From IMG/VR virus record IMGVR_UViG_3300020438_000007, positions 1-64,000 of that record: a DNA stretch of 64,000 nucleotides; one strand, 5' to 3'. A program made the translations under genes and the position numbers. Positions 115 to 62,104 of this stretch are shown here, piece by piece. Position 1 is the stretch's first letter; each line of letters starts with the position of its first letter. A model generated the notes under the pieces. It searched no databases and was not told the DNA's origin. It saw only the letters and a list, made by a program, of their open reading frames with translations.

Positions 115-1203
115 TTAACCGATGGAAGGTGCAGTAAGAGCAACAGGAGTTGACTCAGCAGCAGCGAGATCCAAGGGGAAGTTGTGAGCGTTACGCTCGT
201 GCATGACTTCCATACCCAGACCAGCGCGGTTAAGCACGTCTGCCCATGTTGGAATCACTTTACCACTTGCGTCTACAACCGACTGGTTGAAGTTGAATCC
301 GTTAAGGTTGAATGCCATAGTTGACACACCCATTGCAGTAAACCAGATGCAAACCACTGGGAATGCTGCTAGGAAGAAGTGAAGTGAACGTGAGTTGTTG
401 AAAGATGCGTATTGGAAGATCAAACGACCGAAGTAGCCATGAGCTGCAACGATGTTATATGTTTCTTCTTCTTGTCCGAACTTGTAACCATAGTTCTGAG
501 ACTCTTGCTCAGTTGTTTCTCTGATTAGAGAAGATGTTACGAGTGAACCGTGCATTGCACTGAATAATGAACCACCGAAGACACCAGCCACTCCAAGCAT
601 ATGGAAGGGGTGCATTAGGATATTGTGCTCTGCCTGGAACACGAACATGTAGTTAAAAGTACCTGAGATACCAAGTGGCATTGCATCAGAGAAAGAACCT
701 TGACCGAAAGGATACACTAAGAATACAGCGAATGCTGCAGACACTGGTGCTGAATAAGCAACACAGATCCAAGGACGCATACCTAAACGGTATGAAAGTT
801 CCCACTGACGACCACAGTATGCTGTGATGCCGATTAGGAAATGGAAGACTACAAGTTGGAATGGACCACCGTTATACAACCACTCATCGAGTGATGCTGC
901 TTCCCAGATTGGGTAGAAGTGAAGTCCGATAGCATTTGAACTAGGAACAACTGCACCAGAGATGATGTTGTTACCGTACATTAAAGAACCTGCTACTGGT
1001 TCTCTGATTCCGTCGATGTCTACTGGAGGTGCTGCGATGAAAGCAATGATGAAACATGTTGCTGCTGCCAACAAGCATGGGATCATCAGTACGCCGAACC
1101 AGCCGACATAGATGCGGTTGTCAACTGAGGTTACCCAGCTGCAGAATTCGTCCCATCCTGAGAGGAGACCACCGCGTTGTTTTGAACGTGAAAGAGTTGT
1201 CAT
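115..1203 (-). CDS. psbA: Photosystem II D1 protein
   Basis: Unmistakable D1 sequence ([14 protein letters not shown]...[13 protein letters not shown]). Start placed at MTTLSR (ATG 1203). No intron. Confidence 0.99.
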
Positions 1204-1322
1204 TTGAAAAAGGGTTAGGTAATAGTGCAGGGATACACCGATAAAATATTCCTTCGCCACCCTCAGGCGGAGGTATAAGAGACGTAATTTAATGACCCAT
1301 AGGTCTCGGTTAGCGGGTCAGA
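1204..1322 (-). ncRNA. Structured psbA 5' leader, probably the PhotoRC-II motif
   Basis: TGACCC(1320-1315)/GGGTCA(1298-1293) stem. Loop GAGAC(1307-1303) pairs with GTCTC(1283-1279), giving a pseudoknot. A second hairpin lies at 1251-1273. The position matches the described cyanophage PhotoRC motifs, but the family name is from recall. Confidence 0.65.
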
Positions 1323-1347
1323 AAGATGTTGGAATCAACACCCCTAC

Positions 1348-1384
1348 ATTTATATATGTTAACAGAACTTTACACTTCTGTCAA
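1348..1384 (-). promoter_or_regulatory. psbA promoter: sigma70-like plus an adjacent T4-type late element
   Basis: TTGACA(1384-1379)-17 bp-TAACAT(1361-1356); TATAAAT at 1354-1348. Confidence 0.6.
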
Positions 1385-1515
1385 GTGTCTTCTTGGATTT
1401 CTTTCTTTTTTCTTAACCTTTCCAGAAACTCCTCGTCAGGCGTGAATACTATAGGTCCTTCGGAGATTCTTTCCTCCAACTCATCGAGCAGTGGATCCTT
1501 TTCATTCTGATTCAT
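1381..1515 (-). CDS. Small acidic hypothetical protein (44 aa)
   Basis: MNQNEKDPLLDELEER...; start overlaps the end of the upstream gene. Confidence 0.6.
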   Translation of the reverse strand: MNQNEKDPLLDELEERISEGPIVFTPDEEFLERLRKKKEIQEDT

Positions 1516-2161
1516 GTCGTTCTTTGCTAGTTTTCCAAAAATAATTTTCTTCTGATCCCAGTCCATCCCGATCATGACCGTTCTCTACTTGATAGTAGAC
1601 AGTAGACACCTTGAAGTCGGGGTCTGTTGGTTTCTCAGGAGTCAGACTGTTATCATAAATTCTCATCCTATTGTTAGGGTACAAAGCGAATTGTCCATTG
1701 TCAAGCTCTAAAAGATTAAAACTTTTATGTTCTGGTGGTTGTTCACTCGTAGAATAATCTATTGCGTCTATGTCCTGATGATAGTTGTCAAGAGTACAGA
1801 TGTATGTTCCTGTTTGATTGCCGAAATCTCTAGTCATGATCTCGTAGTGCATTGATCCAATGAACTGTTTCTGCACTGCTACTACACCATAGTCCATACA
1901 GTTCCAGAACTGTAAGTTGTGAAGTGTCAGGTCTGGTGTTGGTAACTCTGGTGATGCTACGAAAGCACTGATGGGTAACTTATCATACATCGCTGCATAC
2001 TCTGGTAGGTATGTCTCAAAGTAAAAGGCACGGCCTGGGATAGACTTTGCAGACACCCAGTATCCCTCTACAAATTCTCCGTGGCCACTCTTATGATCTG
2101 TTAGGTATTCTTTTCGCACCCACACATGATAGGAGGGTAAATTACAAATTAGTGCTGGCAT
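1502..2161 (-). CDS. Conserved cyanophage hypothetical protein
   Basis: Long ORF; start placed at MPALICNLPSY (ATG 2161). Confidence 0.8.
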   Translation of the reverse strand: MPALICNLPSYHVWVRKEYLTDHKSGHGEFVEGYWVSAKSIPGRAFYFETYLPEYAAMYDKLPISAFVASPELPTPDLTLHNLQFWNCMDYGVVAVQKQFIGSMHYEIMTRDFGNQTGTYICTLDNYHQDIDAIDYSTSEQPPEHKSFNLLELDNGQFALYPNNRMRIYDNSLTPEKPTDPDFKVSTVYYQVENGHDRDGLGSEENYFWKTSKERHESE

Positions 2162-2351
2162 TTCTTTCGTATTGTGGTGGTGTGTAGTGATCATTCCAAT
2201 GGCGAATGTTGCCTGCAATGATAAAACAATTAGTTACTACTAGTTGGACAAAGATAAAAGTTCTTATTAAAGCAATCTTATCGGCCTCTTTATCAGACCT
2301 ACCAGACTTGTCTCCAAGTGCTTTTGCCCATACTCTCCAGATTTTTTTCAC
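2142..2351 (-). CDS. Hypothetical membrane protein
   Basis: 69 aa with one hydrophobic stretch; tightly packed with its neighbours. Confidence 0.7.
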   Translation of the reverse strand: MKKIWRVWAKALGDKSGRSDKEADKIALIRTFIFVQLVVTNCFIIAGNIRHWNDHYTPPQYERNASTNL

Positions 2352-2377
2352 TCAAATTATAGTTCTATTATAATGAT

Positions 2378-2710
2378 TTATCCAACTTTCTGCAACCCCT
2401 GTACCACATTCGACTTCACATCTAAAAGTCCTTCTGCACTAAACCAAGGAGCATTCTCCCAGCTGAAACCTTCTCCAAATGTGTTGTCTGCATTGGCAAC
2501 ATACCAATGACATGATGAATCTGGTACATCTACGGCGCATTTAGACCAATCATCAGACCATTGAGGAACTTGTACCCACAATGTCTCTGCGTAAGCTGTT
2601 TGACTTGCACCGAATAACAATACAAATACTGTTATCCAACCAAACAGTCTAGGAATAAACTCTAGTGCCATTGGGCGTTTATATACTTCCATTACATCAT
2701 GGTAGTTCAT
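2378..2710 (-). CDS. Hypothetical membrane-anchored or exported protein
   Basis: Start at MNYHDV (2710) through a TAATG overlap; hydrophobic segment ending AYA|ET. Confidence 0.7.
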   Translation of the reverse strand: MNYHDVMEVYKRPMALEFIPRLFGWITVFVLLFGASQTAYAETLWVQVPQWSDDWSKCAVDVPDSSCHWYVANADNTFGEGFSWENAPWFSAEGLLDVKSNVVQGLQKVG

Positions 2711-2814
2711 TATATTAATCCTACTGATCCTGCTACAGTTCCTACTGCAACAAAGAACGCGAACTCTGCAAGTCCCAACCATGCAGGTGGGATGTTTAAA
2801 AATTGTTTGGTCAT
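2710..2814 (-). CDS. Small membrane protein (34 aa), not in the ORF track
   Basis: MTKQFLNIPPAWLGLAEFAFFVAVGTVAGSVGLI; GAGGAG SD upstream; stop overlaps the next ATG. Confidence 0.7.
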   Translation of the reverse strand: MTKQFLNIPPAWLGLAEFAFFVAVGTVAGSVGLI

Positions 2815-2841
2815 TTAAGCTTGTACTCCTCAGCTATTAGT

Positions 2842-2916
2842 TTATGAAAATACGAACGGTAGTCCGTTGATTGCAGTAAATGCTACTGCACATGCAAATG
2901 TTAATGTGTAAATCAT
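2842..2916 (-). CDS. Hydrophobic micropeptide (24 aa), not in the ORF track
   Basis: MIYTLTFACAVAFTAINGLPFVFS; TAATG overlap with the upstream stop; AAGGA SD. Confidence 0.6.
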   Translation of the reverse strand: MIYTLTFACAVAFTAINGLPFVFS

Positions 2917-3089
2917 TATGTTCCTTGGTATACTGGTGTCATTATCCCACCTTCGGGGTCATCATCGTCATCGTCACCCGATGCTCTTAAAAACAACTCA
3001 AACAATACGAGAACAGTCATGGGATATAAACACCAGACTAATGCTTTCCAATACGGAAATGATTCGGCAATAAACTGATATTCATTCAT
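2916..3089 (-). CDS. Small membrane protein with a poly-Asp tail (57 aa), not in the ORF track
   Basis: MNEYQFIAESFPYWKALVWCLYPMTVLVLFELFLRASGDDDDDDPEGGIMTPVYQGT; AAGGGA SD; late promoter upstream. Confidence 0.7.
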   Translation of the reverse strand: MNEYQFIAESFPYWKALVWCLYPMTVLVLFELFLRASGDDDDDDPEGGIMTPVYQGT

Positions 3090-3132
3090 TTATTATCCCT
3101 TTGTGTTGAATTGTAAATTTATCCTATGTTTT

Positions 3133-3139
3133 TATTTAG
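3133..3139 (-). promoter_or_regulatory. Late promoter CTAAATA
   Basis: Intergenic match to the (A/C)TAAATA motif that recurs upstream of many genes in this window. Confidence 0.55.
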
Positions 3140-3148
3140 TTTTGTAAA

Positions 3149-3179
3149 GTTCTAGGGTAAAAAAATTTGACCCTAGAAC
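3149..3179. terminator. Inverted repeat (terminator or RNA-stabilising hairpin)
   Basis: GTTCTAGGGT...ACCCTAGAAC 10 bp stem overlapping the stop of the 34 aa ORF. Confidence 0.5.
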
Positions 3180-3277
3180 ATACCAACTGCGTTAGTGGTC
3201 GTGCTTACGATCACTGAAATCATAAAGATGTATGGTACAACCTTAAATGGTACTGGTTGTCTCTTTACTGAGTTCAT
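3173..3277 (-). CDS. Small membrane protein (34 aa), not in the ORF track
   Basis: MNSVKRQPVPFKVVPYIFMISVIVSTTTNAVGMF; TAATG overlap with the hli stop. Confidence 0.65.
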   Translation of the reverse strand: MNSVKRQPVPFKVVPYIFMISVIVSTTTNAVGMF

Positions 3278-3399
3278 TACACAAAGCCAGGAATTATTTG
3301 ACCTGTTGTTAGATATGCACCTAACCCTGCGATGATGCCAAGCATGGCAAGTCTGCCATTAAGTTTCTCAGCAACTGATTTTGATTCCTTATCTGTCAT
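3277..3399 (-). CDS. hli: High-light-inducible protein
   Basis: AEKLNGRLAMLG...TGQIIPGF motif; start at MTDKES (3399). Confidence 0.95.
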   Translation of the reverse strand: MTDKESKSVAEKLNGRLAMLGIIAGLGAYLTTGQIIPGFV

Positions 3400-3506
3400 T
3401 AAAAGATGCCTGGAATAATTTGTCCTGTTAAAGCATATGCGCCTACTGCTGCAACGAAACCGAGCATAGCTGCCCAACCGTTAAATCTTTCTGCTTCTGG
3501 TGTCAT
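3399..3506 (-). CDS. hli: High-light-inducible protein (35 aa), not in the ORF track
   Basis: MTPEAERFNGWAAMLGFVAAVGAYALTGQIIPGIF. Confidence 0.95.
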   Translation of the reverse strand: MTPEAERFNGWAAMLGFVAAVGAYALTGQIIPGIF

Positions 3507-3555
3507 GATAGTGTACCTTTTATGTGTTTAAAATGTGTATGATTGGAATCTTCCT

Positions 3556-3747
3556 TTAGAAGATGCCTGGGATGATTTGACCTGTTGTTGTGTATGCAAC
3601 AAGTAATGATACGAAACCGAGCATAGCCCAACGTCCATTCATTTTTTCAGCGTTCTTGCCATACCCTTCATAGGATTCGTCAAGAGTCATCTGAGGTTCG
3701 ATAGAATAGATATTCTGTCTTCCGCCTTGTTCTGTAACAGTTGTCAT
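3556..3747 (-). CDS. hli: High-light-inducible protein
   Basis: AEKMNGRWAMLG...TGQIIPGIF. Confidence 0.95.
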   Translation of the reverse strand: MTTVTEQGGRQNIYSIEPQMTLDESYEGYGKNAEKMNGRWAMLGFVSLLVAYTTTGQIIPGIF

Positions 3748-3771
3748 TGAATTATTAAGAAACGTAACATA

Positions 3772-3800
3772 ATTATATAGTAAAGTTTAAATTTTGTCAA
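3772..3800 (-). promoter_or_regulatory. Consensus sigma70 promoter of the hli operon
   Basis: TTGACA(3800-3795)-17 bp-TATAAT(3777-3772). Confidence 0.85.
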
Positions 3801-3829
3801 GAAACTTAACAATTAAATATTTCCAAGTT

Positions 3830-3997
3830 CTAATATTCGTACTCTTTTAAGACTTCTAGGACGCAGTTTAGAGCCTGCTGTGCTGCTGCTCTCTGTCGAT
3901 CATCCCATTCTGAATACCATGTCTTGTCATACAATCCATTCTTCATCTTTAATAGTCTGGCGGTCATGTCAACCTTTGATAGTCTACCAGTGCTCAT
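3830..3997 (-). CDS. Hypothetical protein (55 aa), not in the ORF track
   Basis: MSTGRLSKVDMTARLLKMKNGLY...; ATGA overlap with the upstream stop. Confidence 0.7.
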   Translation of the reverse strand: MSTGRLSKVDMTARLLKMKNGLYDKTWYSEWDDRQRAAAQQALNCVLEVLKEYEY

Positions 3998-4533
3998 GAT
4001 TGATTTGGTCCTCTAGGGGGTTCTGTAAGGTAAATGTTACCTGATATCGTAGTTCCCTCTCCGCCACTCGTTACAAAGTGTTCTATCCATGAGGGGAAGA
4101 TAATAATATTACCAGCGGGAACGTTGGGAATGAAATCCATAGAGATTGCAGTACCATACATTGCCCACTGATTCATTATTAATTTACGAGAAGGATTCAT
4201 AAAAACAGTTCTGGAATGATCCACAGACTCCACAATAATGAAACTCCATTGAGCCCCTGAGTGGATGTGTGGATCTTGCCAGTCGTGTTTCTCATATTTG
4301 TTACGCCACACCTGACCAATCACAAAATCATCTGGTATGAACTGTTGTACGCACTCTGCAATGAGTCCTTTAACATATTCATATGATTCATCAGTGAACT
4401 TATCATGTCCCAGTGTTGTAGGACAATCACTAAGGAATGTAGGTTGAAAATCCTCAGATACCAAATTGACCTCATCTAGATCGATGGATTCAACAAAAAA
4501 TGGTGCCGAGAATATTGCGTGTGGATTTCTCAT
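3994..4533 (-). CDS. 2OG-Fe(II) oxygenase-like protein
   Basis: W..Y...HxH (PHIH) and FPSWIEH motifs; ISGN near the C-terminus. Confidence 0.75.
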   Translation of the reverse strand: MRNPHAIFSAPFFVESIDLDEVNLVSEDFQPTFLSDCPTTLGHDKFTDESYEYVKGLIAECVQQFIPDDFVIGQVWRNKYEKHDWQDPHIHSGAQWSFIIVESVDHSRTVFMNPSRKLIMNQWAMYGTAISMDFIPNVPAGNIIIFPSWIEHFVTSGGEGTTISGNIYLTEPPRGPNQS

Positions 4534-4550
4534 GTTGTAATTATAACAGA

Positions 4551-4583
4551 AAAAAGACCCACTGCAATCACAGGGGTCTTTTT
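4551..4583. terminator. Rho-independent terminator overlapping the next promoter
   Basis: AAAAAGACCC...GGGTCTTTTT; TATAAT at 4545-4540 just beyond it. Confidence 0.75.
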
Positions 4584-4609
4584 GTTTTTATATACTAACG
4601 TATCTATGT

Positions 4610-4960
4610 TTAGAAAACGTACTTAGCACCGACTTTAACACCGTATCCATTGTCTGCACCATCAGCAGTTTGGAAAGTTACTTCACCATAACCAAGAACT
4701 GTCTCTGACAAATCAACAGATCCACCTGCCTTAGCAAGGAATTCTGTGTCGCCATCAGTACCGTCAGGTGAGTTTACGATAGGACCGCCTTGAACGAACC
4801 AGTTGGAACCTTCGTAACCAAGTGCGAACTCAGTTGTATTTCCAGTGTAGTCCCCACCAGTGAATGAAGAATTGGCTTCTACATTTACATAAGGACCTGC
4901 GAACGCGGCACCAGCGAAAAGGGGTGCAGCAGCTAAAGCTGCGATTACATTTTTGAACAT
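4610..4960 (-). CDS. Small outer-membrane beta-barrel-like protein
   Basis: Signal peptide (..AGAAFA|GP), amphipathic beta strands and a C-terminal KYVF typical of BAM substrates. Confidence 0.75.
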   Translation of the reverse strand: MFKNVIAALAAAPLFAGAAFAGPYVNVEANSSFTGGDYTGNTTEFALGYEGSNWFVQGGPIVNSPDGTDGDTEFLAKAGGSVDLSETVLGYGEVTFQTADGADNGYGVKVGAKYVF

Positions 4961-4979
4961 TTAAAATTTCTCTCTAATT

Positions 4980-5144
4980 TACTTGCTGATTTGTTACCAG
5001 CAGATGATGGAAGTCTCGACATGACTTCGTGTTAGGTTTTGAACTTAACAGACCTAGCGCGAGTAATTGAGGCATTCGGAATACTTGTTCTCCCACAACA
5101 CGTCTGTTATGGAATGGTGACCCTGGCGGAATCGCCAGTTCCAT
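4980..5144 (-). ncRNA. Structured cis-regulatory RNA, probably the manA motif
   Basis: Paired elements ATGGAA/TTCCAT, CTGGCG/CGCCAG, AACAGAC/GTCTGTT, GAAGTC/GACTTC and TGCTG/CAGCA, with a possible CTCG/CGAG pseudoknot. It lies between the promoter and the ORF. The family assignment is from recall. Confidence 0.6.
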
Positions 5145-5145
5145 T

Positions 5146-5179
5146 TATTTAGTATACCACATGATCGATATCGCGTCAA
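5146..5179 (-). promoter_or_regulatory. Sigma70 promoter overlapping a late promoter
   Basis: TTGACG(5179-5174)-17 bp-TATACT(5156-5151); CTAAATA at 5152-5146. Confidence 0.8.
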
Positions 5180-5186
5180 GTGTTAC

Positions 5187-5993
5187 TTATCCCTGACCTT
5201 GATTTCTGGGATCACCACCAGCGATCCTACCTAGATAAGGATCAAAATCGGATAACATATCAATGGTGATATCCCCACCTCTTGTATTCCAGAGTTCTCT
5301 GAGACCATCGTGACTACCCCTATGGAAGACCTCAATGTGTTCCTCATGGATTGAGGAACCTAGTTCGATCTTGTATAGGAAGACAGGACAGGCATAAGCT
5401 GCACCTGAGTTGTAGATCAGGTCATCAGCGACAGGTCTGGGTTTCACGCCATTGTCGAGTTTGTATTTCTCTCCTCTGACATGAAGTTTCAATAGTTTCT
5501 GAGCATGATGTCTAGTTATTACATAACATGCAGTAGAAAAGTCATTAATAAATCTACGATGAACCTGTACATGTAATTCGCCAGGGCAAATTACTGCAAC
5601 TTGGACTGTATCCCAGTCGTATGGCATCCTAGAGATGAATTGTCTCCATGTAAATGTCCAGAACTGTGCGATACTAATATCACAATCATCTTCCATGATG
5701 ATTGCATAGGGTTCATCAGTCTCTTCAACAAAATGTTTGAGTGCTTTGAGGTGTGATGTTACACATCCTATCTCTCCAGCAGTAATACTATCTGGATACT
5801 TACCAGTTAATATATCACTTAGATCATCCCCTGTAGAGGGTCTACCATCGTATGCAGAGATACGAGTATAGTTTTCTATCTCCCATTCCTTAAGTTGATT
5901 TGACATCCACTCCATTCTCTCTGGCTGTTCATCCAGATTAATAATGTAAAGAGGACCGAATCCTTTAAGTTTGTATGCGGCTTTATTTGACAT
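5187..5993 (-). CDS. Glycosyltransferase family 25
   Basis: YIINL...ER, GEIGCVTSH and IMEDD motifs. Confidence 0.85.
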   Translation of the reverse strand: MSNKAAYKLKGFGPLYIINLDEQPERMEWMSNQLKEWEIENYTRISAYDGRPSTGDDLSDILTGKYPDSITAGEIGCVTSHLKALKHFVEETDEPYAIIMEDDCDISIAQFWTFTWRQFISRMPYDWDTVQVAVICPGELHVQVHRRFINDFSTACYVITRHHAQKLLKLHVRGEKYKLDNGVKPRPVADDLIYNSGAAYACPVFLYKIELGSSIHEEHIEVFHRGSHDGLRELWNTRGGDITIDMLSDFDPYLGRIAGGDPRNQGQG

Positions 5994-6492
5994 CGAAAAA
6001 GAATGTTTGTGTGAGTCTACTTGTTTCTAATGTGTTCCCGAAGCCAGGAACTATACTTCTATGATACAACACTTTGCCGCGATACGCAACCAGTCTATTG
6101 TAAATATTTCCTACACCGATATTCATATCACTATCGGGAGACTGATAGATAGCAGTTCCAGAATCAAGAATAGGATTGGGAGTCAGATATAATACTGCTG
6201 CCCACTCTCCTTGATCTTCTCCCTGACTATCAACATGAACCCAAGTTTCTGTTCCTTCTTGGCATGATTGAAAACAAAAACTATCCTGTGTCCAATCCCA
6301 TACTATCTCTCCTCCGAGAGTAGTCTTTAGTTTGGTCTCTACCTCTGTCTGTAGATCACCACCCAAAGCAGTATTTGATCTGACACCTGGCACAGATTTT
6401 TGAATCCTATCATAATCTAAGGATAAGGCATGAAACCTTATCCTGTCTGGGTCATCTAAAAAATTATCTATTACAATTAGATTACGTTCCAT
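5983..6492 (-). CDS. 2OG-Fe(II) oxygenase-like protein
   Basis: IVIDNF, HVD, VLYL, NRLV..., HRS and RLTQTFF motifs. Confidence 0.7.
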   Translation of the reverse strand: MERNLIVIDNFLDDPDRIRFHALSLDYDRIQKSVPGVRSNTALGGDLQTEVETKLKTTLGGEIVWDWTQDSFCFQSCQEGTETWVHVDSQGEDQGEWAAVLYLTPNPILDSGTAIYQSPDSDMNIGVGNIYNRLVAYRGKVLYHRSIVPGFGNTLETSRLTQTFFFDVK

Positions 6493-6560
6493 TGCTCAAC
6501 CTGACAGACCAAAAAATAGCCAGAGATTTTTTTACGGTATTTTTGAAACTAAAAGTGAAA

Positions 6561-54295: not shown

Positions 54296-54320
54296 GATAG
54301 TTTCAACTCCAGTACGCTAT

Positions 54321-54328
54321 TATTTATA
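54321..54328 (-). promoter_or_regulatory. Late promoter TATAAATA for the ptox operon
   Basis: Exact T4 late consensus in an intergenic position. Confidence 0.7.
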
Positions 54329-54373
54329 ATAACATACTAGGTATAAACCACTAGTTATGTGTGGACTTACTGA

Positions 54374-54646: not shown

Positions 54647-54652
54647 GATTCC

Positions 54653-56200
54653 TTAATAACCTCTCTTATATTTAGCGGATTCATCCTCTGGGTTGATGAT
54701 GATTGTATTTTTACCACTCATGGGTTTAATCTCTTTGTTCTTATCTGGATACTTTTTATCAGTTTCCCAGATAAATTCTTCACGCCAGTCAGAGTATGAC
54801 TCATTTCTTTGTTCAGAGACTCCCATTTTTTTCAGTGCTGCTGCTTTTGCTTTATCCTTCTGCATCTGAGCATAGGTTCTCATGTTTTTCTTGCCCGCAG
54901 CCTTTGCCTCCTGTTCCGCTTTGATGAAATTAGTTGCCTCTTTGACTTCTTTTGCCTTTTCATCTCTCAATCCTTGAATGATTTTATCTGCTGCGTTTCT
55001 TGTCTGCTCTTTACTACTTGCTTTAGTTGCTGGTCTACCCCTCTTACCACTAGTAGATCCTTTTGGTCTACCAGCTTTCTTCGGAACTGATGTTGCCTTA
55101 ACAGTGATTGCCTTATCTCCACTCTCATCATCTTTCTTTCCCTGTGCTTTCATGGCGGCCATGAGTCTATTAGCGCCTGCGTCAGACTTCTTGTTCTTCT
55201 CATTCTGATTGATAGCAGCTTTGACTGCACCCTTCACTATAGGAGAATTGGTCTTCCCACCTTCTCCACCTGTTGTAGTAAGTTTTCCGCCTGGTGATCT
55301 TACAATGTTTCCAATTTTCTGTCCAGAGTCTTTCTCTACTTGGTTCTTAGCAGAGGTGTCTTTCGATGCTGTTTTAATCTGTTTTTCAACTGTTTTATTA
55401 TCAGGCGATTTTGTGAACTTCCTCATCGACGAAGAGTCTTTACTCTGTGTGGGAGTCTTGGATGTATCATTAGTAGTTTGTTTCCTTACCTTTCTAGATT
55501 CTCTATACTTATCCTCTGCTGTTTTTCTTGCAGCTGCTCTTCTTTCCTGGCCTGGTCTATACTTTTCAGCATCACCTGTGATAGTTTTACCACCAGAAGT
55601 TTTTACTTCTTGGGGTTTGTCCATACCAATAAACTTTTTGCCAACACCCTTAAGTGCTGTACCAAGTACACCCCTAGTTCCAGTACCACCAGTAGTAACT
55701 TTATCTGAATCAGAACCTGTAACTTTACTTCTTGGTAATCCTTTTGTGTCTTGTGCTTTCTTTTTATCTTTATAAGCAGAGATGCCACCACCAATAGTAG
55801 ATTGAGCTCTACCAGCCAGGGCTCTCATATTAGTTCCAAGTCCAGTTCCTCTGGTTGCATCTTCTTTATCTGGTCTGTATTTTGCAAATCCTGATACAGC
55901 TCCGCCTACTGCGGAAAGTTGTCTTTGTCCTCTATCAGACGATGCGTACTTACTTGCTCTATCTTTATTCCTATCTAACGTCGCCTGTATCCCTCTTTTC
56001 TTAGTTCCATCGTTTAATCTTCCAGCCCTTGTAGGAATACTAGGAGCCTGAGCACCTTTAGTTACAGGAGATCTAGCTCCTGTAGTGGTGGACTTAACAG
56101 AAGCTGTAGTTTTAGTTTTATCAAAACGTTTTGAGACATCCACTCCAACAATCTCAGTTATTGGAGACTGTTCATATTCAAATTGTTCAAAGCTTTTCAT
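54653..56200 (-). CDS. Large basic low-complexity protein with a capsid-targeting-like N-terminus
   Basis: MKSFEQFEYE..ITE; Lys/Gly/Ala-rich body; ESYSDWREEF motif. Confidence 0.8.
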   Translation of the reverse strand: MKSFEQFEYEQSPITEIVGVDVSKRFDKTKTTASVKSTTTGARSPVTKGAQAPSIPTRAGRLNDGTKKRGIQATLDRNKDRASKYASSDRGQRQLSAVGGAVSGFAKYRPDKEDATRGTGLGTNMRALAGRAQSTIGGGISAYKDKKKAQDTKGLPRSKVTGSDSDKVTTGGTGTRGVLGTALKGVGKKFIGMDKPQEVKTSGGKTITGDAEKYRPGQERRAAARKTAEDKYRESRKVRKQTTNDTSKTPTQSKDSSSMRKFTKSPDNKTVEKQIKTASKDTSAKNQVEKDSGQKIGNIVRSPGGKLTTTGGEGGKTNSPIVKGAVKAAINQNEKNKKSDAGANRLMAAMKAQGKKDDESGDKAITVKATSVPKKAGRPKGSTSGKRGRPATKASSKEQTRNAADKIIQGLRDEKAKEVKEATNFIKAEQEAKAAGKKNMRTYAQMQKDKAKAAALKKMGVSEQRNESYSDWREEFIWETDKKYPDKNKEIKPMSGKNTIIINPEDESAKYKRGY

Positions 56201-56207
56201 GTGTATC

Positions 56208-57059
56208 CTACTTCTGGATGGACTTGTGTGCTTTAAGAATAGAACTTGCGTGTTTCTCTACAGTCTCTTCTGACATAGTTTCTTCCACTTCCTCTTCTTG
56301 TTTAGAGAACGAAACTGGACTCTTGACATTGAAACTCTCGTTCTTAGGACGGCAATCATTCACCATCTTGTTTCCTTTCTTCTTCATTCCGACTTTCTTA
56401 TGAGTATCCCAACAGGCAACTTCATCTACGTTCTCTACTTCTTCCTTCTTCATTGCCTTTCCGATTGCGTCACGACGATTCTTAAGGTATGAATCAGACT
56501 TATCTACATCACCATCATTATCAACATCAGCATCTTCCTTTCCGACTGGATCTAATTTCTTTTTCTTTTTCTTTCCTTCCTCTAAAGGAGTTACTTGATA
56601 CCTTGTACCAGACATCTCTCCAAGAGTAGTAAGGTTTGCTGCAACCTGATCCCAGAGTCTATTGGCCAAGTTCTCATCTGGATTACCTAATGGTTTTGGA
56701 GTAACAACATCAGTAATCTCATGAGTTAAATTACCATCCATATCATGCAATTCAACAGATTCACTGTTGTTAAGTTGACCCTTTCCTCTAAGTTTATCAG
56801 CAGTATCTTTAACTTTTCCGACACCATCAGCAACAGCACCAACCTTACCAGCAATGTTTGCAGCCTTAGAAAGTCCACCCATTACTTTAGCACCCTTAAT
56901 GGCACCCATGGCGGCCTTTGCTGCCAGTAAAGAACCAGTAACTACAGCCTCATCAGTCTGTTCCTTATCATCATGCTCGATGACTTTACCATCAGTATCT
57001 TTCTGATGATGTTCATACATTGATTTATAAGCATTAACCAGTTTTGAATCGTCAGTCAT
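56208..57059 (-). CDS. Modular protein with a DxDxDG loop, putative internal head protein
   Basis: DADVDNDGDVDKSD; CW...KKKGNKMVNDC module; multiple hydrophobic-X-E sites; late motif at 57102-57096. Confidence 0.8.
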   Translation of the reverse strand: MTDDSKLVNAYKSMYEHHQKDTDGKVIEHDDKEQTDEAVVTGSLLAAKAAMGAIKGAKVMGGLSKAANIAGKVGAVADGVGKVKDTADKLRGKGQLNNSESVELHDMDGNLTHEITDVVTPKPLGNPDENLANRLWDQVAANLTTLGEMSGTRYQVTPLEEGKKKKKKLDPVGKEDADVDNDGDVDKSDSYLKNRRDAIGKAMKKEEVENVDEVACWDTHKKVGMKKKGNKMVNDCRPKNESFNVKSPVSFSKQEEEVEETMSEETVEKHASSILKAHKSIQK

Positions 57060-57098: not shown

Positions 57099-58466
57099 TT
57101 ATCCCTTTCCAACTTTGTAAGGTATAGATGTATCATTATATTTTACTCCAGGTCCACTAGGAGGATCATTAGGATTCTTTACTTTCTTGCCATCATGGTA
57201 AGAACCACTGGTAATTGGTTTAATAATAGGATCATTATTCCATTTCTTATCACCTTGGCCTGGTGTCATTCTCTGCATGTATTGTCTATACTCATCTGTC
57301 CCTACATCATATGCCTCTGTCAAGTCTTTTAACCATGCTTTGTACATAGTAGACTCTGGAGTTTGTACGATAACATGATTCGCACCTCTTCTAGTAATTC
57401 TACCTCTCACTCCAGTGTTTACATTCTCTACTAATGATCCTACTTTATAACATTGCTCGTTGAGATATGCAATTCTCAATCCAAATGGATCTAACTTAGG
57501 TGCATACTGCCATGTCTCAGAAGCTAATGATCCTCTAAGTTGATCATCAGTGGCTCCCATAGATTTTTGAATGAGGTTGAAGAGATTTTTTTTCTCCATA
57601 TTACCTAAGTTGGGAATACCTTTTGCAAATCCTTTGAAGTCATCCTTTGCTACTGCATCTCTCATCTTAGATGCAGACATACCCTCTACACCATCTGAGT
57701 CTGGATCTCTTGCACCAGCAGATATGACTTGAAGATCCTCAAAATCATATAAGTCACCATTATATTTCTGTGCAAGACTTTGGAATTCGGAGAGTCTATC
57801 TTGTCCTACAACTATTGTTATTGCTTTGTATCCTAGATTGAAGGCACCTGTAAGAACATCAAATATAGTTCTTGCATTAGGATCATCTTTGATATCCTCT
57901 TCATAATCTGGGAACATCTTCCTCATATATTCTATTTTCGCACCAGGCTGTAGAGGATTCTTCTTAGAATCTACACTACGACTTGGATATACCTTCAAGT
58001 CAAATCCTAGTCTGTTTGCTTCTGATTTTGCTTTTTGTAATAACTTTTCGTGTCCTACTGTTGGTGGATTGAATCTACCAAATACAACTACTGCACCCTC
58101 GCTAGCAGGATTTCCCATCACCTCTGCTGTCTGTTTATCCGATTCGCCAGGCTCAGGTGATTTGGTTGCGGTAGAAGAAGGATCTTCCTTTGGTTTTGGT
58201 TTTGGAGAAGATGCAACTGGAGCAGGTGCTTTCTTCTGGACAGTGGGTTTCTCAGGTGTGGCAACTTTAGTAGATTTTGGATCGTCGGTGGCGGCCGCAC
58301 CCCCTCCTCCTGTGTATTGAAGTTTACCGCTTACAGTTTTTGCAACGAATTTACCCTTAGCATCATACCAGCCTCCATGACCGTCGCCCTTTAGTCCCTT
58401 GAGTTTAGCCTCAGTGGATGCAGCAGTCTTTACAGCTTCTGTTAAAAATTGACCGAAGGATTTCAC
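57099..58466 (-). CDS. Cytidylyltransferase-like HxGH nucleotidyltransferase with a capsid-targeting-like N-terminus
   Basis: GTG start MKSFGQFLTEA; FGRFNPPTVGHEKL, VVGQDR and MSASKMR motifs; late motif at 58498-58492. Confidence 0.88.
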   Translation of the reverse strand: MKSFGQFLTEAVKTAASTEAKLKGLKGDGHGGWYDAKGKFVAKTVSGKLQYTGGGGAAATDDPKSTKVATPEKPTVQKKAPAPVASSPKPKPKEDPSSTATKSPEPGESDKQTAEVMGNPASEGAVVVFGRFNPPTVGHEKLLQKAKSEANRLGFDLKVYPSRSVDSKKNPLQPGAKIEYMRKMFPDYEEDIKDDPNARTIFDVLTGAFNLGYKAITIVVGQDRLSEFQSLAQKYNGDLYDFEDLQVISAGARDPDSDGVEGMSASKMRDAVAKDDFKGFAKGIPNLGNMEKKNLFNLIQKSMGATDDQLRGSLASETWQYAPKLDPFGLRIAYLNEQCYKVGSLVENVNTGVRGRITRRGANHVIVQTPESTMYKAWLKDLTEAYDVGTDEYRQYMQRMTPGQGDKKWNNDPIIKPITSGSYHDGKKVKNPNDPPSGPGVKYNDTSIPYKVGKG

Positions 58467-58502: not shown

Positions 58503-59762
58503 TTAAGATATCTTATTAAACTTAACAGCAAGATTTTGGAATTGACCCATCTTGTGCATTGCACCTACTTTATTAGTTCTAGTTGTGAAAGCCATTGACA
58601 TGACTGAACCATCACTCAATACAATATTAAAATCTTGCTTACCACTACCCGCTTGAGCCCTCACACTTGTTACAGCCGTCAAGGCAGCAGACAATTTTTC
58701 ATTAGTATTATCTAAACTCGCATCAGTTTCTGTGGCCTTTACCGTTATTGCTGGAGTTCTGAATCCTGAGTATGCAATCTTTTGAGTAATATATTTTTTT
58801 GCCATAACAAAATTACTATTGAAAAGATTGATCAACTCCTGTCTCACAATATTCAAATTAGAATCATATAATCTATTATACTCAGCCTCATTCTGTTGTT
58901 CAAATTCAAAAGTCTTTAGTGCCAGTCTTGATGTTCCCCAGAAGGCTTTATCAGATGCTTCGATACCTTCTATGGATTCATAGTTTGGCCATAGTTTATC
59001 TTTGATTGCATTGTAAGAACTCTGTTCACCAAAGAAATCAAATATTGGTTTCACATATGTGTTCAACTTAGGTTCAGCAGATTTTGCAGTTCCAGCCTTT
59101 AGACTGATACCTAACATACCACCATTTCTATACTGGATAAAGATATCGCCAGGATGACTTCCATCTACACCACTTGGTTTTGCTCTGTATCCCCAGTAAC
59201 ATTGTGCAATAGGATGTTTTGCATTATGAGATCTCAACCACTTTGTTATATTCTTTGCGTTCGTTACTTTTGTTTGGAATGATCCGTTCTCTGCCTGATC
59301 TATAAATTTCTTTCCAGCAACTGCATCCTGTGATGTTAGATAGTATGCAGCATTAGGATTATTAGCCTTTCTAATTGCTTGATAAAAATCTCTAACTGAT
59401 AGGTTAGGATTGATACCGTTCATAAAAGCAATACATGGAAACAGTTCTGTCATGGAAGAGTTCAACGTTGTCATTGACATACCACCCTTTCTGGGTTTGT
59501 ATATAAACATTAAAATAGTTCCGTCACCCATCCTTACACAGGATACAGGAACGGAACTAACAGATTTCTGTTCGTTATAAACTCTGCCTAGTCTTGATAG
59601 AAGTCCTTCTACGTCTGCTTTAGTTTTATCTCTGTCATCAGACTTAACGAGATAAGTAACTGACCTAGAAGTTGCACCTTTTACTTCTACATCTCTATCA
59701 GGAATATTAATCTCCTGTAAGATCTGATTAAGTTCTAATACTTCCTCAGCAGTTCTAGCCAT
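58503..59762 (-). CDS. Hypothetical protein, possibly a PD-(D/E)xK nuclease
   Basis: TE...PGDIF...GISLK pattern; late motif at 59782-59776. Confidence 0.6.
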   Translation of the reverse strand: MARTAEEVLELNQILQEINIPDRDVEVKGATSRSVTYLVKSDDRDKTKADVEGLLSRLGRVYNEQKSVSSVPVSCVRMGDGTILMFIYKPRKGGMSMTTLNSSMTELFPCIAFMNGINPNLSVRDFYQAIRKANNPNAAYYLTSQDAVAGKKFIDQAENGSFQTKVTNAKNITKWLRSHNAKHPIAQCYWGYRAKPSGVDGSHPGDIFIQYRNGGMLGISLKAGTAKSAEPKLNTYVKPIFDFFGEQSSYNAIKDKLWPNYESIEGIEASDKAFWGTSRLALKTFEFEQQNEAEYNRLYDSNLNIVRQELINLFNSNFVMAKKYITQKIAYSGFRTPAITVKATETDASLDNTNEKLSAALTAVTSVRAQAGSGKQDFNIVLSDGSVMSMAFTTRTNKVGAMHKMGQFQNLAVKFNKIS

Positions 59763-59778
59763 GACTTTTTGATACTAT

Positions 59779-60183
59779 TTAGAGGTCTCCCTCCTGTCTG
59801 TTCTCGGAATAATGCACATCAAAACTACCGCCTGGATATCTTTTCTCTAGTTTCTTGACGTTTGTTTCAATTACCTCGTCAAATGATACGTCCAGTGCCA
59901 TACATGCTTGTGCTACATACCACATTACATCTCCCAATTCGGTAATAAGATGATGTTTGTTTGCACCATTCCAAGGCTTTCCTTGGAAAACCATCTTCTT
60001 TACAATCTCAGTAAACTCACCCGCTTCAGCAGATACACCTACCGCAGCAGTCAAAAGTCTTTCAATGTTCGCACCCTGTCCATCCAACTCAACCATACGG
60101 TCAGCGAGATTAACAAAATCTTTGGAAGCGTCAGAGGTTACGGCATCTACAAATGTCTCGTACCTTTTAAAATCAATAGTCAT
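59779..60183 (-). CDS. mazG: MazG-like NTP pyrophosphohydrolase
   Basis: AEAGEFTEIVKK, ELGDVMWY and NVKKLEKRYP motifs. Confidence 0.95.
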   Translation of the reverse strand: MTIDFKRYETFVDAVTSDASKDFVNLADRMVELDGQGANIERLLTAAVGVSAEAGEFTEIVKKMVFQGKPWNGANKHHLITELGDVMWYVAQACMALDVSFDEVIETNVKKLEKRYPGGSFDVHYSENRQEGDL

Positions 60184-61565
60184 TAGAATTTCAACGTTGC
60201 GAACTTGTTTTTGATCTTTTTAGATTCATCATTATTATACTCCTCATCCTGTCCACTGTCAACTATGCCATCCTGAGCACTCTGGTCACAATCAAATAGT
60301 TTCATCTTTGAACGATCAATACCAATAACAAATCTCTTATTCATATTGATATCGTTGTATCTATTCTTCAACTGTTTGATCATAATTTGATTTACTTCCT
60401 CTAATTCCTCCGTAGAAATAAGAGCAAACATAAGGTCGGCAGTAGCGGGAAGACCGAATGACTCAGAGGTATCTGTAATATCAACGTCACTGTTACTATA
60501 CCCACTACGAGTGGTTTGAGTTGCGGATACAATAGGAAGGTTCGCTTCAACTGCGAGACCCCTAAGTTCCTCTGCGATTGCTTTGATGTAGGAGTATGAG
60601 TTGACATTAGAACCAGCTCTATAACGTGATGATGCACATATGTTTAAGTAATCAATAAAGATAATATCAGGTTTGAAAGACTTTTTAAGTGCAAGTTCAT
60701 TCAACAAACCTTTGAAATGTCCTGAGTGTGCAGCGGCAGTGGGATACTCTTTGATGATAAGATTACCTTGAGTCTTTTCTGACAATTTAGTAACCTTAGT
60801 TTCAAACATCTGACGAGGAATCTCTGTCAACTGTTGTATAGGTATGTTTAAAAGATTAGCATCAATTCTTTCAGCAATCTTTTCCTCAGCCATCTCAAGC
60901 GTGATGTATAATACGTTCTTGCCTTGGAGTAACATACTGCTTGCGACATGACACATAAACAAAGACTTACCAACACCAGTGCCAGCGAGAGCAATATTGA
61001 GTGTTTTATTTGGAAGGCCACCCTTTGTAATCTTGTTGAGAAATTCGAGGTCAAACTCGATTCTATCTTCCTTCTTGTGATATGAGTCAAATCTCTCCTC
61101 ATAATCCTCTAAGTAATCGTGTCCAACATGGTTATCAAATCCAACAGCAAGTGCATCTGATAGGATAGCAGGGATAGCATCGACACCTTTCTTGATATCA
61201 TGTCCGTCTGCAATAGAGATACTCTCGACCAGTGCAAGATAGATTGCTCTTTCCTTACACCATTTCTCTGTAGTATCTATCAACCAATCATCTACAGCAT
61301 CTTCTTTACTTGTCTGACTTAGACAATCTAAAATTTCTTTGTAGGTATCATCATTGATATCCTTTCTCTTCTCACATTCAATGGAGAGAATCTCTACAGT
61401 AGGGCACTTGTCATAGTCTACAATAAATCTTGCACACTCTTCAAATATAATCTTATCTGTCGTCTTGTCAAAGTAATCGGGTTTTAGGAAAGGCAATACC
61501 TTCCTTGTATAATCCTCATTGAATATGAGATTCTTGATGATCGTATTTTCAATAGTTTCAATCAT
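60183..61565 (-). CDS. Replicative DNA helicase (T4 gp41-like)
   Basis: AGTGVGKS, TLEMAEE, IDYL, SATQ and KNRY motifs. Confidence 0.97.
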   Translation of the reverse strand: MIETIENTIIKNLIFNEDYTRKVLPFLKPDYFDKTTDKIIFEECARFIVDYDKCPTVEILSIECEKRKDINDDTYKEILDCLSQTSKEDAVDDWLIDTTEKWCKERAIYLALVESISIADGHDIKKGVDAIPAILSDALAVGFDNHVGHDYLEDYEERFDSYHKKEDRIEFDLEFLNKITKGGLPNKTLNIALAGTGVGKSLFMCHVASSMLLQGKNVLYITLEMAEEKIAERIDANLLNIPIQQLTEIPRQMFETKVTKLSEKTQGNLIIKEYPTAAAHSGHFKGLLNELALKKSFKPDIIFIDYLNICASSRYRAGSNVNSYSYIKAIAEELRGLAVEANLPIVSATQTTRSGYSNSDVDITDTSESFGLPATADLMFALISTEELEEVNQIMIKQLKNRYNDINMNKRFVIGIDRSKMKLFDCDQSAQDGIVDSGQDEEYNNDESKKIKNKFATLKF

Positions 61566-62104
61566 TGATAATGAAGATATGTACTCATAATGTACTTTGG
61601 TGATCCGTCTTTAACAGGATATCCTCTGTGTGGATATTGCCATGTGGGAGGGAATACTAACACTCTACCAGTTTTAGGTTGAACTGTCAATTCATTATAT
61701 GGAAAGTCGGTCTCTCCGCCTACAAAATCATCATTAAGATAAAAGAGAAAAGCAAGGTATCTCTTTGCACTCATGTGATCTTGAACATCAGTATGCAATC
61801 CAAACTGGTCACTGCCTGGATCATACTTTTTAATTCTAAATTCTTCAAAGAAAAATCTGTCAGGGAACCACTCCACATATTCTGGCAGATCTTTCTTATA
61901 TCGTTTTATTACATCTACAGTTTTGTAACACAACAACTGTACAAACTTATCAAACTTGCCAGCCGTGTTTAAATTAACTTGAGTAAAATCAGGTACTCCA
62001 CCATTTTCTACTCTCTGCTTTTTCTCACAGTTTTCATATGTTTCTATGATAGATTTGCATAATGATTCATCAAAAACCTCATAGGTCTTGATGAATTTAT
62101 CCAT
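61562..62104 (-). CDS. 2OG-Fe(II) oxygenase (prolyl-4-hydroxylase-like)
   Basis: HTD, YLND..GGET.F, HRG and KYI motifs; start at MDKFIK. Confidence 0.88.
   Translation of the reverse strand: MDKFIKTYEVFDESLCKSIIETYENCEKKQRVENGGVPDFTQVNLNTAGKFDKFVQLLCYKTVDVIKRYKKDLPEYVEWFPDRFFFEEFRIKKYDPGSDQFGLHTDVQDHMSAKRYLAFLFYLNDDFVGGETDFPYNELTVQPKTGRVLVFPPTWQYPHRGYPVKDGSPKYIMSTYLHYQ

What the first reader, a model, noticed from the sequence alone, without database searches (positions are those of the whole stretch)
631..61820. Window-wide rule: CCWGG and CCGG survive almost only next to a 5' G or 3' C, suggesting restriction avoidance shielded by an overlapping GC modification
Seen: a hand scan found about 60 CCWGG sites. 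All but two (aCCAGGg near 37311, tCCAGGt near 57148) have a G immediately 5' or a C immediately 3', so they read GCCWGG on one strand; examples are 633, 6044, 20364, 31028, 31514, 36251 and 55546/55551. At this base composition roughly two thirds of sites should lack such a flank. CCGG is nearly absent: I found three sites (near 36664, 39066 and 54472), and all three also have the GC flank. Pro-Gly codon pairs cannot avoid CCNGG, and after Pro this AT-rich genome often uses the otherwise disfavoured Gly codon GGC. Inference: the host restricts CCWGG/CCNGG and CCGG, and only sites whose outer C sits in a GC context are protected, for example by a phage GpC/GCC-type methyltransferase encoded elsewhere. 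Alternatives are an unusual longer recognition site (HCCNGGD) or context-dependent methyl-C decay. The counts are manual and may miss sites.
Basis: partly seen in the sequence, partly recalled or inferred. Interest (0 to 1): 0.82.

Follow-up and report, generated by a model that had tools for sequence, protein, structure and literature searches.

The report
Flank-conditional restriction-site avoidance in a cyanophage
This marine cyanophage removes many restriction-enzyme sites from its DNA and keeps the unavoidable ones only where a G precedes their first C, which suggests an unidentified cytosine modification although no DNA methyltransferase gene is recognisable.

Summary
The window is a T4-like cyanomyovirus about 85% identical to Synechococcus phage S-SSM7. 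It holds 60 CCWGG sites, and 58 have a 5' G or a 3' C. An amino-acid-preserving codon shuffle expects 50.5±5.1 unflanked sites. It holds 3 CCGG sites (about 55 expected), all flanked. Fifty of the 60 CCWGG sites are Pro-Gly codon pairs. CCS-GGN would create CCGG, so the phage uses the rare GGC whenever the preceding codon does not end in G (31/33, against 5/17 when it does). Both window exceptions, and all 10 in the whole S-SSM7 genome, overlap GGWCC. The same flank exemption holds for CTGCAG, CTCGAG, CCATGG, CCTAGG, CCTGAA and GCGC, but only where the C lies in G-C-Y. It is absent from other cyanomyoviruses. Several unrelated enzymes are unlikely to share one flank preference. The best reading is therefore restriction avoidance with overlapping cytosine modification at GCY and GGWCC. 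A general GpC mark is excluded. S-SSM7 has no recognisable DNA methyltransferase, so the source of the mark is unknown. No modification was observed directly.

The parts
633..61819 (.). The 60 CCWGG sites of the window. 58 read GCCWGG on one strand. 50 are CCW-GGN Pro-Gly codon pairs.
37308..37315 (.). GGACCAGG: an unflanked CCWGG (37311) that overlaps GGWCC.
   Evidence: All 10 unflanked sites of S-SSM7 overlap GGWCC in the same way.
57148..57155 (.). CCAGGTCC: an unflanked CCWGG that overlaps GGWCC. The homologous S-SSM7 site has a 5' G instead.
45177..45184 (.). CCAGGACC: a CCWGG with both a 5' G and a GGWCC overlap. The S-SSM7 homologue keeps only the GGWCC overlap.
36664..36667 (.). CCGG survivor with a 3' C.
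39066..39069 (.). CCGG survivor with a 5' G.
54472..54475 (.). CCGG survivor with a 5' G and a 3' C.
735..50165 (.). The 10 CTGCAG sites (735, 1139, 11428, 24860, 37105, 38845, 43489, 49299, 49983, 50160). All have a 5' G or a 3' C.
   Evidence: The null expects 12.1±3.1 unflanked; 0 were observed.
7387..56911 (.). Four CCATGG sites (17284, 28873, 34549, 56906) and four CCTAGG sites (7387, 19098, 51403, 51418). All have a GC flank.
6043..33581 (.). Five CCWGG sites (6044, 9052, 23700, 28986, 33575) where the protective flank changed sides between the window (G..H) and S-SSM7 (H..C).
58503..59762 (-). A 419-aa conserved cyanomyovirus protein whose C-terminal half has a restriction-endonuclease-like fold. 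It is the candidate for the self-avoidance rival, not part of the main explanation.

Best explanation
The phage lineage is under DNA-level purifying selection from several restriction activities in its natural hosts. These include one acting on CCWGG and one on CCGG. It has no recognisable DNA methyltransferase, so it deletes sites by synonymous change. Pro-Gly codon pairs cannot escape. CCC/CCG-GGN makes CCGG and CCA/CCT-GGN makes CCWGG. The phage keeps CCW-GGN and makes it harmless by ensuring that a G precedes the site or a C follows it, using the rare Gly codon GGC when needed. A flank on one strand is enough. The exemption most likely arises because the first C of a site, when it sits in 5'-G-C-Y-3', carries a modification in virion DNA that blocks cleavage. 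A second mark at GGWCC does the same for CC-initial sites that overlap it. Shown: the statistics, the codon logic, the flank swaps, the clade restriction, the extension to other sites, and the lack of a recognisable phage methyltransferase. Inferred: that the agents are restriction endonucleases, that the exemption is a base modification, which C is modified, and whether host or phage makes the mark.
For: Window null: unflanked CCWGG 2 against 50.5±5.1, flanked 58 against 24.8. S-SSM7 whole genome: unflanked sites not overlapping GGWCC 0 against 181.8±9.7. Unflanked GGWCC-overlapping sites 10 against 16.5. Flanked 196 against 72. Codon test: after Pro, GGC is used in 31/33 (window) and 117/126 (S-SSM7) cases when the previous codon ends in a non-G. 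It is used in only 5/17 and 10/66 when it ends in G, close to the 10% baseline. Every non-GGC case after a non-G overlaps GGWCC. Flanked sites in the xCC-WGG reading frame are at the null level, 8 against 11. Flank swaps: five full swaps between the window and S-SSM7, and no shared site lost all protection. Extension to other sites: S-SSM7 CTGCAG 27 flanked and 0 unflanked (null 38.8 and 45.8); CTCGAG 5 and 0 (6.6 and 13.7); CCATGG 18 and 3 (11.9 and 24.2); CCTAGG 10 and 3 (3.6 and 10.5). All six unflanked survivors overlap GGWCC. The window has CTGCAG 10 and 0, CCATGG 4 and 0, CCTAGG 4 and 0. Controls CATATG, CTTAAG and CCAAGG/CCTTGG sit at the null. CCTGAA: H-flanked 15 against 142, G-flanked 18 against 21. 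GCGC survives only as RGCGCY, 33 against 36, compared with 0 against 21 with no Y. Hexamers holding GCY are tolerated and those holding only GCA or GCG are absent. Clade specificity: further S-SSM7-like contigs give CCWGG 181:1 and CTGCAG 16:0. One megabase of other cyanomyoviruses gives 222:945 and 116:178. CCGG survivors in rule-bearing lineages are all flanked, about 20 unique sites, against 115/362 elsewhere. m4C at RGCY, GGWCC and CCWGG/CCNGG is reported in marine Myoviridae-like genomes (PMC8919816).
Against: No modified base has been observed. Only assembled contigs of public runs were available. S-SSM7 and the window have no C5 or N4/N6 methyltransferase motif, no homologue of the Syn9 DNA methyltransferase, and no Pfam DNA methyltransferase among about 35 proteins screened. 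The source of the mark is therefore unknown. Several sites whose C lies in GCY are still avoided: AGCT (about 0.4 of null), AGCC (0.48) and GGSCC (0 against 47 in S-SSM7). GCCGG is absent from S-SSM7, 0 against 54.6 expected flanked. Flanked CCWGG in the xxC-CWG-Gxx reading frame is low, 3 against 16. These need enzymes insensitive to the mark, or relics of earlier avoidance. GCY and GGWCC cannot be merged into one motif, so two marks are needed. Outside CCWGG, the unbiased scan found about as many cores for G as the protective flank as for A, C or T. The extension rests mainly on the C-initial palindromes.
Confidence: 0.6

Rival explanations
1. Intrinsic enzyme specificity. The host CCWGG enzyme, a homodimer cutting before the first C like EcoRII or PspGI, reads the flanking base pair and rejects G. 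Its real site would be HCCWGGD, and no modification is involved.
For: All combinations of non-G half-sites are removed, and one G half-site is enough. That is how a homodimer with a degenerate outer position would behave. From my own knowledge: enzymes of the CCGG/CCNGG structural family usually read the base pair next to the scissile bond. The same genome avoids WCCTGC but not CCCTGC or GCCTGC, so degenerate flank specificities do occur.
Against: The same exemption holds for CTGCAG, CTCGAG, CCATGG, CCTAGG, CCTGAA and, in some lineages, CCGG. It would require at least six unrelated enzymes with the same 'not G' flank rule. It does not explain why GGWCC overlap rescues CCWGG, CCATGG and CCTAGG alike.
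Confidence: 0.12
2. Self-avoidance. The phage encodes its own sequence-specific nuclease, for example to degrade GC-rich host DNA. Its genome has been purged of that nuclease's targets.
For: Window ORF 58503-59762 (-) is a conserved cyanomyovirus protein with a restriction-endonuclease-like C-terminal fold and a PGD...SLK motif on adjacent strands. The S-SSM7-like version is only about 50% identical to the versions in phages that avoid GGCC but not CCWGG.
Against: One nuclease cannot account for about 20 different missing palindromes or for the shared G-flank exemption. No PDB match was significant. Nuclease activity is unproven. The gene family occurs in phages without the rule.
Confidence: 0.06
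3. Context-dependent mutational decay. CCWGG is methylated and deaminates, or a deaminase prefers H-C contexts, so unflanked sites disappear through mutation bias alone.
For: CTWGG plus CCWAG is slightly above the null, 227 against 197.
Against: Decay cannot raise the number of flanked Pro-Gly sites fourfold, 183 against 43.5. It cannot make the Gly codon depend on the last base of the previous codon. Control sites starting with C (CATATG, CTTAAG, CCAAGG/CCTTGG) show no flank effect.
Confidence: 0.02
4. Translational or codon-pair selection on Pro-Gly rather than a DNA-level effect.
For: 83% of the window sites and 94% of S-SSM7 coding sites are Pro-Gly codon pairs.
Against: The rule is symmetric on the two DNA strands. 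It depends on the third base of the upstream codon. It holds in genes on both strands and removes sites in the other two reading frames. It has GGWCC exceptions, applies to non-Pro-Gly sites such as CTGCAG, and is absent from related phages with the same proteins.
Confidence: 0.02

Closest known systems
Restriction-site (palindrome) avoidance in phage genomes
   Same: There is strong depletion of short palindromes relative to an amino-acid-preserving null, achieved by synonymous codon choice and specific to a lineage. 23 of 64 hexamer palindromes are absent from the window.
   Different: Avoidance depends on the flanking base. I found no earlier description of this conditional rule in cyanophages.
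Blocking of restriction enzymes by overlapping methylation, such as Dcm or Dam overlap effects on AvaII, Sau96I or StuI
   Same: A site is exempt when its outer base also belongs to another modified motif, and modification of one strand is enough. GGWCCWGG is the mirror image of the well-known Dcm block of AvaII (my own knowledge).
   Different: Here the overlap is inferred from what evolution has kept in the sequence, not measured. The inferred motif G-C-Y has no known enzyme in this phage.
m4C methylation at RGCY, GGWCC and CCWGG/CCNGG in marine Myoviridae-like genomes (Hiraoka et al. 2022, PMC8919816)
   Same: The same ecological setting and nearly the same motifs. GGWCC matches exactly, and RGCY is a subset of the inferred NGCY.
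   Different: Those genomes carry on average 2.2 methyltransferase genes, whereas S-SSM7 has none recognisable. The base at -2 of the protective flank is unconstrained and mostly Y, so the motif is not RGCY. RGCY words are themselves still avoided here.
GpC methyltransferase M.CviPI of chlorella viruses
   Different: A general GpC mark would also protect CTGCAG (internal GCA), ATGCAT, GTGCAC, TGCGCA, GCGC and AGCT. All of these are avoided. No C5-methyltransferase motifs were found.
Mom adenine hypermodification of phage Mu (PMC13219725)
   Same: A Mom-family gene (PF25680, E 2.5e-32) lies in S-SSM7, and in contigs identical to the window about 1.5 kb before its start. It is an anti-restriction modification specific to this lineage among cyanomyoviruses.
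   Different: Mom modifies adenine in S-A-S. The protective contexts (G before C; GCCGG) need no adenine. An S-A-S rule would protect every CCWGG and every S-W-CCWGG, which is not observed. Other Mom-bearing phages lack the flank rule.

Membership tests
Restriction-site avoidance | Depletion relative to a null that preserves protein sequence and codon usage | tested here: met
   Unflanked CCWGG z -9.5 in the window. 0 against 182 in S-SSM7. CCGG 3 against about 55.
Restriction-site avoidance | Achieved by synonymous choices at the DNA level | tested here: met
   The Gly codon after Pro depends on the last base of the preceding codon. There are flank swaps between relatives.
Restriction-site avoidance | A host enzyme with the matching specificity | not testable with these tools
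   80 cyanobacterial loci showed no matching depletion, but marine Synechococcus was poorly sampled. Syn5, grown on the same laboratory host WH8109, avoids none of these sites.
Protection by an overlapping modification | The same overlapping context exempts several unrelated recognition sites | tested here: met
   CCWGG, CTGCAG, CTCGAG, CCATGG, CCTAGG, CCTGAA, and CCGG in some lineages. GGWCC overlap rescues three different sites.
Protection by an overlapping modification | A modified base is present at the motif | not testable with these tools
   Only assembled contigs of public runs were available, and no long raw reads were listed.
Protection by an overlapping modification | A modifying enzyme is encoded by the phage | tested here: not met
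   No C5 or N4/N6 motif, no Syn9 methyltransferase homologue, and no Pfam DNA methyltransferase in the screened proteins of S-SSM7 or the window. A host or non-canonical source remains possible.
GpC (M.CviPI-type) methylation | Every GpC cytosine is protected | tested here: not met
   GCA and GCG contexts do not protect. CTGCAG needs an external G although it holds an internal GC. ATGCAT, GTGCAC and TGCGCA are absent.
RGCY (CviJI-type) methylation | A purine two bases before the modified C | tested here: not met
   Base -2 of G-flanked half-sites in S-SSM7: T 87, C 55, A 43, G 22.
Mom-type adenine modification as the shield | An adenine in S-A-S at the position that decides protection | tested here: not met
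   The deciding base pair is G:C, and GCCGG holds no adenine. Exceptions are strictly GGW, not S-W. The gene itself is present.
Extended-specificity CCWGG endonuclease (HCCWGGD) | The flank dependence is confined to CCWGG | tested here: not met
   The same flank dependence appears at five or more other sites.

The most novel reading that the evidence does not exclude
S-SSM7-like cyanophages may carry sequence-specific cytosine (or G:C-step) modifications at G-C-Y and GGWCC made by an enzyme that is not a recognisable SAM-dependent DNA methyltransferase. Candidates are a retargeted Mom-family transferase or one of the many lineage-specific unknown proteins. If so, the phage's own codon usage is an evolutionary footprint that reveals the motif of a new DNA-modification system.
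Probability: 0.2. Interest if true: 0.9.

Novelty: new variant of a known kind. Interest (0 to 1): 0.72.

Why it matters
Restriction avoidance and overlap protection are both known. Here the pattern of surviving sites works as a genetic footprint of a modification motif. From sequence alone it predicts that virion DNA of a cultured phage, S-SSM7, is marked at G-C-Y and GGWCC although no methyltransferase gene is recognisable. If that is correct, either marine picocyanobacteria imprint their phages with conserved orphan modifications, or the phage has a non-canonical modifying enzyme. Both options can be tested directly on an existing isolate. The work also shows how two overlapping avoided sites, CCGG and CCWGG, force a genome-wide change in codon-pair usage at every Pro-Gly. 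The same flank-conditional analysis could infer epigenetic motifs for uncultured viruses from assemblies alone.

Tried and rejected
- General GpC methylation was rejected. GCA and GCG contexts do not protect, and AGCT, GCGC and ATGCAT remain avoided.
- RGCY methylation was rejected because base -2 is unconstrained.
- Mom as the shield was rejected. No adenine sits at the deciding position, an S-A-S rule predicts the wrong exceptions, and Mom-bearing contigs L193, L195, L201-L230 lack the rule.
- The window's 'putative methyltransferase' (12782-13594) resembles sugar O-methyltransferases in a sugar-modification gene cluster.
- S-SSM7's PF05175 protein is shared with phages that lack the rule, judging by the annotation's cluster numbers.
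- Host genomes gave nothing. 80 loci around cyanobacterial psbA showed no depletion of unflanked CCWGG, and the sample was mostly Prochlorococcus and freshwater or filamentous taxa.
- The laboratory host gave no clue, because podovirus Syn5 from WH8109 avoids none of the sites.
- Public reads: all listed holders are assembled contigs and no nanopore run was listed, so modification-linked miscalls could not be examined and read laying was not used.
- Literature searches for GCCWGG, for CCWGG with cyanophage or Synechococcus, and for restriction avoidance in cyanophages found no earlier description. The supplements of PMC8919816 are not held.
- Phosphorothioation at GpC and a CCD-type nickase were considered from my own knowledge and set aside. 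The cleavage positions differ among the enzymes concerned, and CCWWGG is not avoided.
- The PDB Foldseek search for the 419-aa protein gave no significant match.


Full report
**Identity.** Window 30000-36000 matches Synechococcus phage S-SSM7 and cyanophage S-SSM6a at 85% identity over 95% of its length. These are T4-like cyanomyoviruses of the genus Lipsvirus, isolated on WH8109. The window corresponds to roughly 153-216 kb of S-SSM7 in reverse orientation. It runs from psbA (115-1260, minus strand) through a sugar-modification cluster, baseplate genes, nrdAB, gp61, gp41 and uvsX. Its first 42 bases occur exactly in four IMG/VR contigs, one of 230,739 bp. G+C is 39.5%.

**The observation.** The window holds 60 CCWGG sites, and 58 have a 5' G or a 3' C. 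It holds 3 CCGG sites, all flanked, and no CCSGG. I called 86 genes heuristically from long ORFs, covering about 96% of the window. I then permuted synonymous codons within each gene 1000 times. Unflanked CCWGG is 2 against 50.5±5.1. Flanked is 58 against 24.8±4.0. CCGG is 3 against about 55.

**Why the sites exist at all.** Fifty of the 60 window sites, and 192 of 204 coding sites in S-SSM7, are CCW-GGN Pro-Gly codon pairs.
- No Pro-Gly pair uses CCC or CCG, because that would create CCGG.
- GGC is 10% of all Gly codons but 72% after Pro.
- When the codon before Pro ends in A, C or T, Gly is GGC in 31 of 33 cases (window) and 117 of 126 (S-SSM7).
- When that codon ends in G, GGC falls to 5 of 17 and 10 of 66, near the baseline.

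In S-SSM7, by reading frame:
- Pro-Gly frame: flanked 183 against 43.5, unflanked 9 against 126.6.
- xCC-WGG frame: flanked 8 against 11, unflanked 0 against 17.
- xxC-CWG-Gxx frame: flanked 3 against 16, unflanked 1 against 55.

So CCWGG is removed wherever synonymous change allows. Where it cannot be removed, it is given a GC flank.

**The exceptions.** The whole S-SSM7 genome (232,878 bp) has no CCGG. Expectation is about 186 from the shuffles and about 340 from composition. It has 206 CCWGG sites, of which 10 are unflanked. All 10 overlap GGWCC, and so do both window exceptions. Under the null, 181.8±9.7 unflanked sites should not overlap GGWCC; none does. About 16.5 should overlap it; 10 do. 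Among GGWCC-overlapping sites, about half lack a GC flank. Among all other sites, none lacks one.

**Ongoing selection.** Of 47 window sites that align to S-SSM7, 40 are shared. At five of these (6044, 9052, 23700, 28986, 33575) the protective flank has moved from the 5' G to the 3' C. Others gained or lost a second flank. No shared site lost all protection except where GGWCC overlaps.

**Distribution among phages.**
- I fetched 80 contigs through NrdA. Only the closest relatives (L007-L009), and possibly two short contigs, follow the rule. About 70 other cyanomyovirus contigs, and Syn9, have many unflanked sites.
- I fetched 67 contigs through the Mom-like protein. All S-SSM7-like ones follow the rule.
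- So do two phage lineages, L196/L197 and L232-L236. In the fetched loci they share only the Mom-like gene (plus one weak match in L197) with S-SSM7.
- Many low-G+C contigs avoid CCWGG entirely and encode Pro-Gly through CCGG. Others do not avoid it at all.
- In lineages with the rule, CCGG survivors are all flanked: window 3/3, L184 7/7, and about 10 unique sites in L232-L236. Elsewhere the ratio is 115 of 362.
- L190 carries a 2-kb stretch with six unflanked sites and two CCGG, which looks like a recent acquisition.

**The decisive extension.** The flank exemption is not special to CCWGG.

| Site | S-SSM7 flanked / unflanked | Null flanked / unflanked |
|---|---|---|
| CTGCAG | 27 / 0 | 38.8 / 45.8 |
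| CTCGAG | 5 / 0 | 6.6 / 13.7 |
| CCATGG | 18 / 3 | 11.9 / 24.2 |
| CCTAGG | 10 / 3 | 3.6 / 10.5 |

- All six unflanked CCATGG and CCTAGG survivors overlap GGWCC.
- The window has CTGCAG 10 / 0, CCATGG 4 / 0 and CCTAGG 4 / 0.
- Controls CATATG, CTTAAG and CCAAGG/CCTTGG sit at the null.
- The asymmetric word CCTGAA is 15 against 142 when H-flanked and 18 against 21 when G-flanked.
- GCGC survives only as RGCGCY, where its last C lies in G-C-Y.
- Hexamers whose GC step is GCA or GCG are absent whatever their flank: ATGCAT, GTGCAC, TGCGCA, CACGTG, and CAATTG in S-SSM7. GCTAGC, AGCGCT, GGCGCC, AGGCCT and TGGCCA are tolerated.
- Further S-SSM7-like contigs (189 kb) give CCWGG 181:1, CTGCAG 16:0 and CCTAGG 7:0. 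One megabase of other cyanomyoviruses gives 222:945, 116:178 and 6:42.

**Interpretation.** Several unrelated recognition sequences share the same exemption, so the cause is unlikely to be the flank preference of each enzyme. It more likely lies in the phage DNA. The simplest reading is a modification of the C in 5'-G-C-Y-3', plus a second mark at GGWCC. Each blocks enzymes whose site begins with that C, and hemi-modification is sufficient. m4C at RGCY, GGWCC and CCWGG/CCNGG is reported for marine Myoviridae-like genomes (PMC8919816).

**What does not fit.**
- AGCT (about 0.4 of null), AGCC (0.48) and GGSCC (0 against 47) are still avoided in S-SSM7, although their C lies in GCY.
- GCCGG is absent from S-SSM7.
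- The phage has no recognisable DNA methyltransferase.
- No modified base was observed.
- The Mom-family gene next to the window modifies adenine in S-A-S in phage Mu (PMC13219725). It cannot explain a G:C-determined rule, and other Mom-bearing phages lack the rule.

**Rivals.** I give 0.12 to a degenerate HCCWGGD enzyme and 0.06 to self-avoidance of a phage nuclease. The nuclease candidate is the 419-aa protein at 58503-59762, whose fold resembles restriction endonucleases. Mutational decay and translational selection each get about 0.02, because the codon-level results contradict them.

**Verdict.** The finding is a new variant of known phenomena, with a concrete and testable prediction for a cultured phage.

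Noticed in passing
window 58503-59762 (-): A 419-aa protein of unknown function, conserved in T4-like cyanophages between mazG and a cytidylyltransferase-like gene. The AF2 model has pLDDT 81.5. The C-terminal half matches an AFDB 'Restriction endonuclease' cluster (E 2e-10) and an Atlas cluster partly annotated RE_HaeIII (TM 0.87). An invariant PGD...SLK lies on adjacent strands, as in PD-(D/E)XK nucleases. No PDB or Pfam match.
   Followed up: partly
L005:16772-17395 (S-SSM7); L170:3212-3832, about 1.5 kb before window position 1: A Mom-family DNA modification gene (PF25680, E 2.5e-32) lies just outside the window, in contigs identical to it. It is unusual among cyanomyoviruses. Its target in this phage is unknown.
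   Followed up: partly
whole window: 23 of the 64 palindromic hexamers are absent, among them TTCGAA, ATGCAT, GGTACC, GTCGAC, GTGCAC, TACGTA, GACGTC and TGCGCA. AGCT, AGCC and TCGA are at about 0.4 of expectation. GATC is enriched (322 against 282).
   Followed up: partly
S-SSM7 whole genome (L001-L005): GGCC is tolerated when flanked by H...D (97 against about 125), but GGGCC/GGCCC is absent (0 against 47), while GGWCC is tolerated. This fits a GGNCC-type enzyme with only the GGWCC subset protected. The window keeps 7 GGSCC.
   Followed up: partly
S-SSM7 whole genome; window counts: WCCTGC is strongly depleted (ACCTGC 16/125, TCCTGC 22/109), while CCCTGC is enriched (102/40) and GCCTGC is normal. 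GAATGC is also depleted. These look like asymmetric (type IIS, IIG or III-like) targets.
   Followed up: no
L190:1298-3242: An S-SSM7-like contig holds a 2-kb stretch with six unflanked CCWGG and two CCGG, while the rest of the contig obeys the rule. It is probably a recently acquired segment not yet purged (PHROG families of unknown function).
   Followed up: partly
window 115-1260 (-): The phage psbA product is closest (86-89%) to psbA of high-light Prochlorococcus genomes rather than marine Synechococcus, although the cultured relative was isolated on Synechococcus WH8109.
   Followed up: no
L003:47240-48382 (S-SSM7, outside the window): A 380-aa S-SSM7 protein matches the Druantia DruA family (PF14236, E 1.4e-11), which is unexpected in a phage.
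   Followed up: no
L008, L009, L016, L056, L196, L197, L232-L236: Sister and unrelated lineages lack GGWCC almost completely (0-3 against 4-19 expected), while S-SSM7 and the window tolerate it. The GGWCC protection therefore seems to be a recent trait of the S-SSM7/window sublineage.
   Followed up: no
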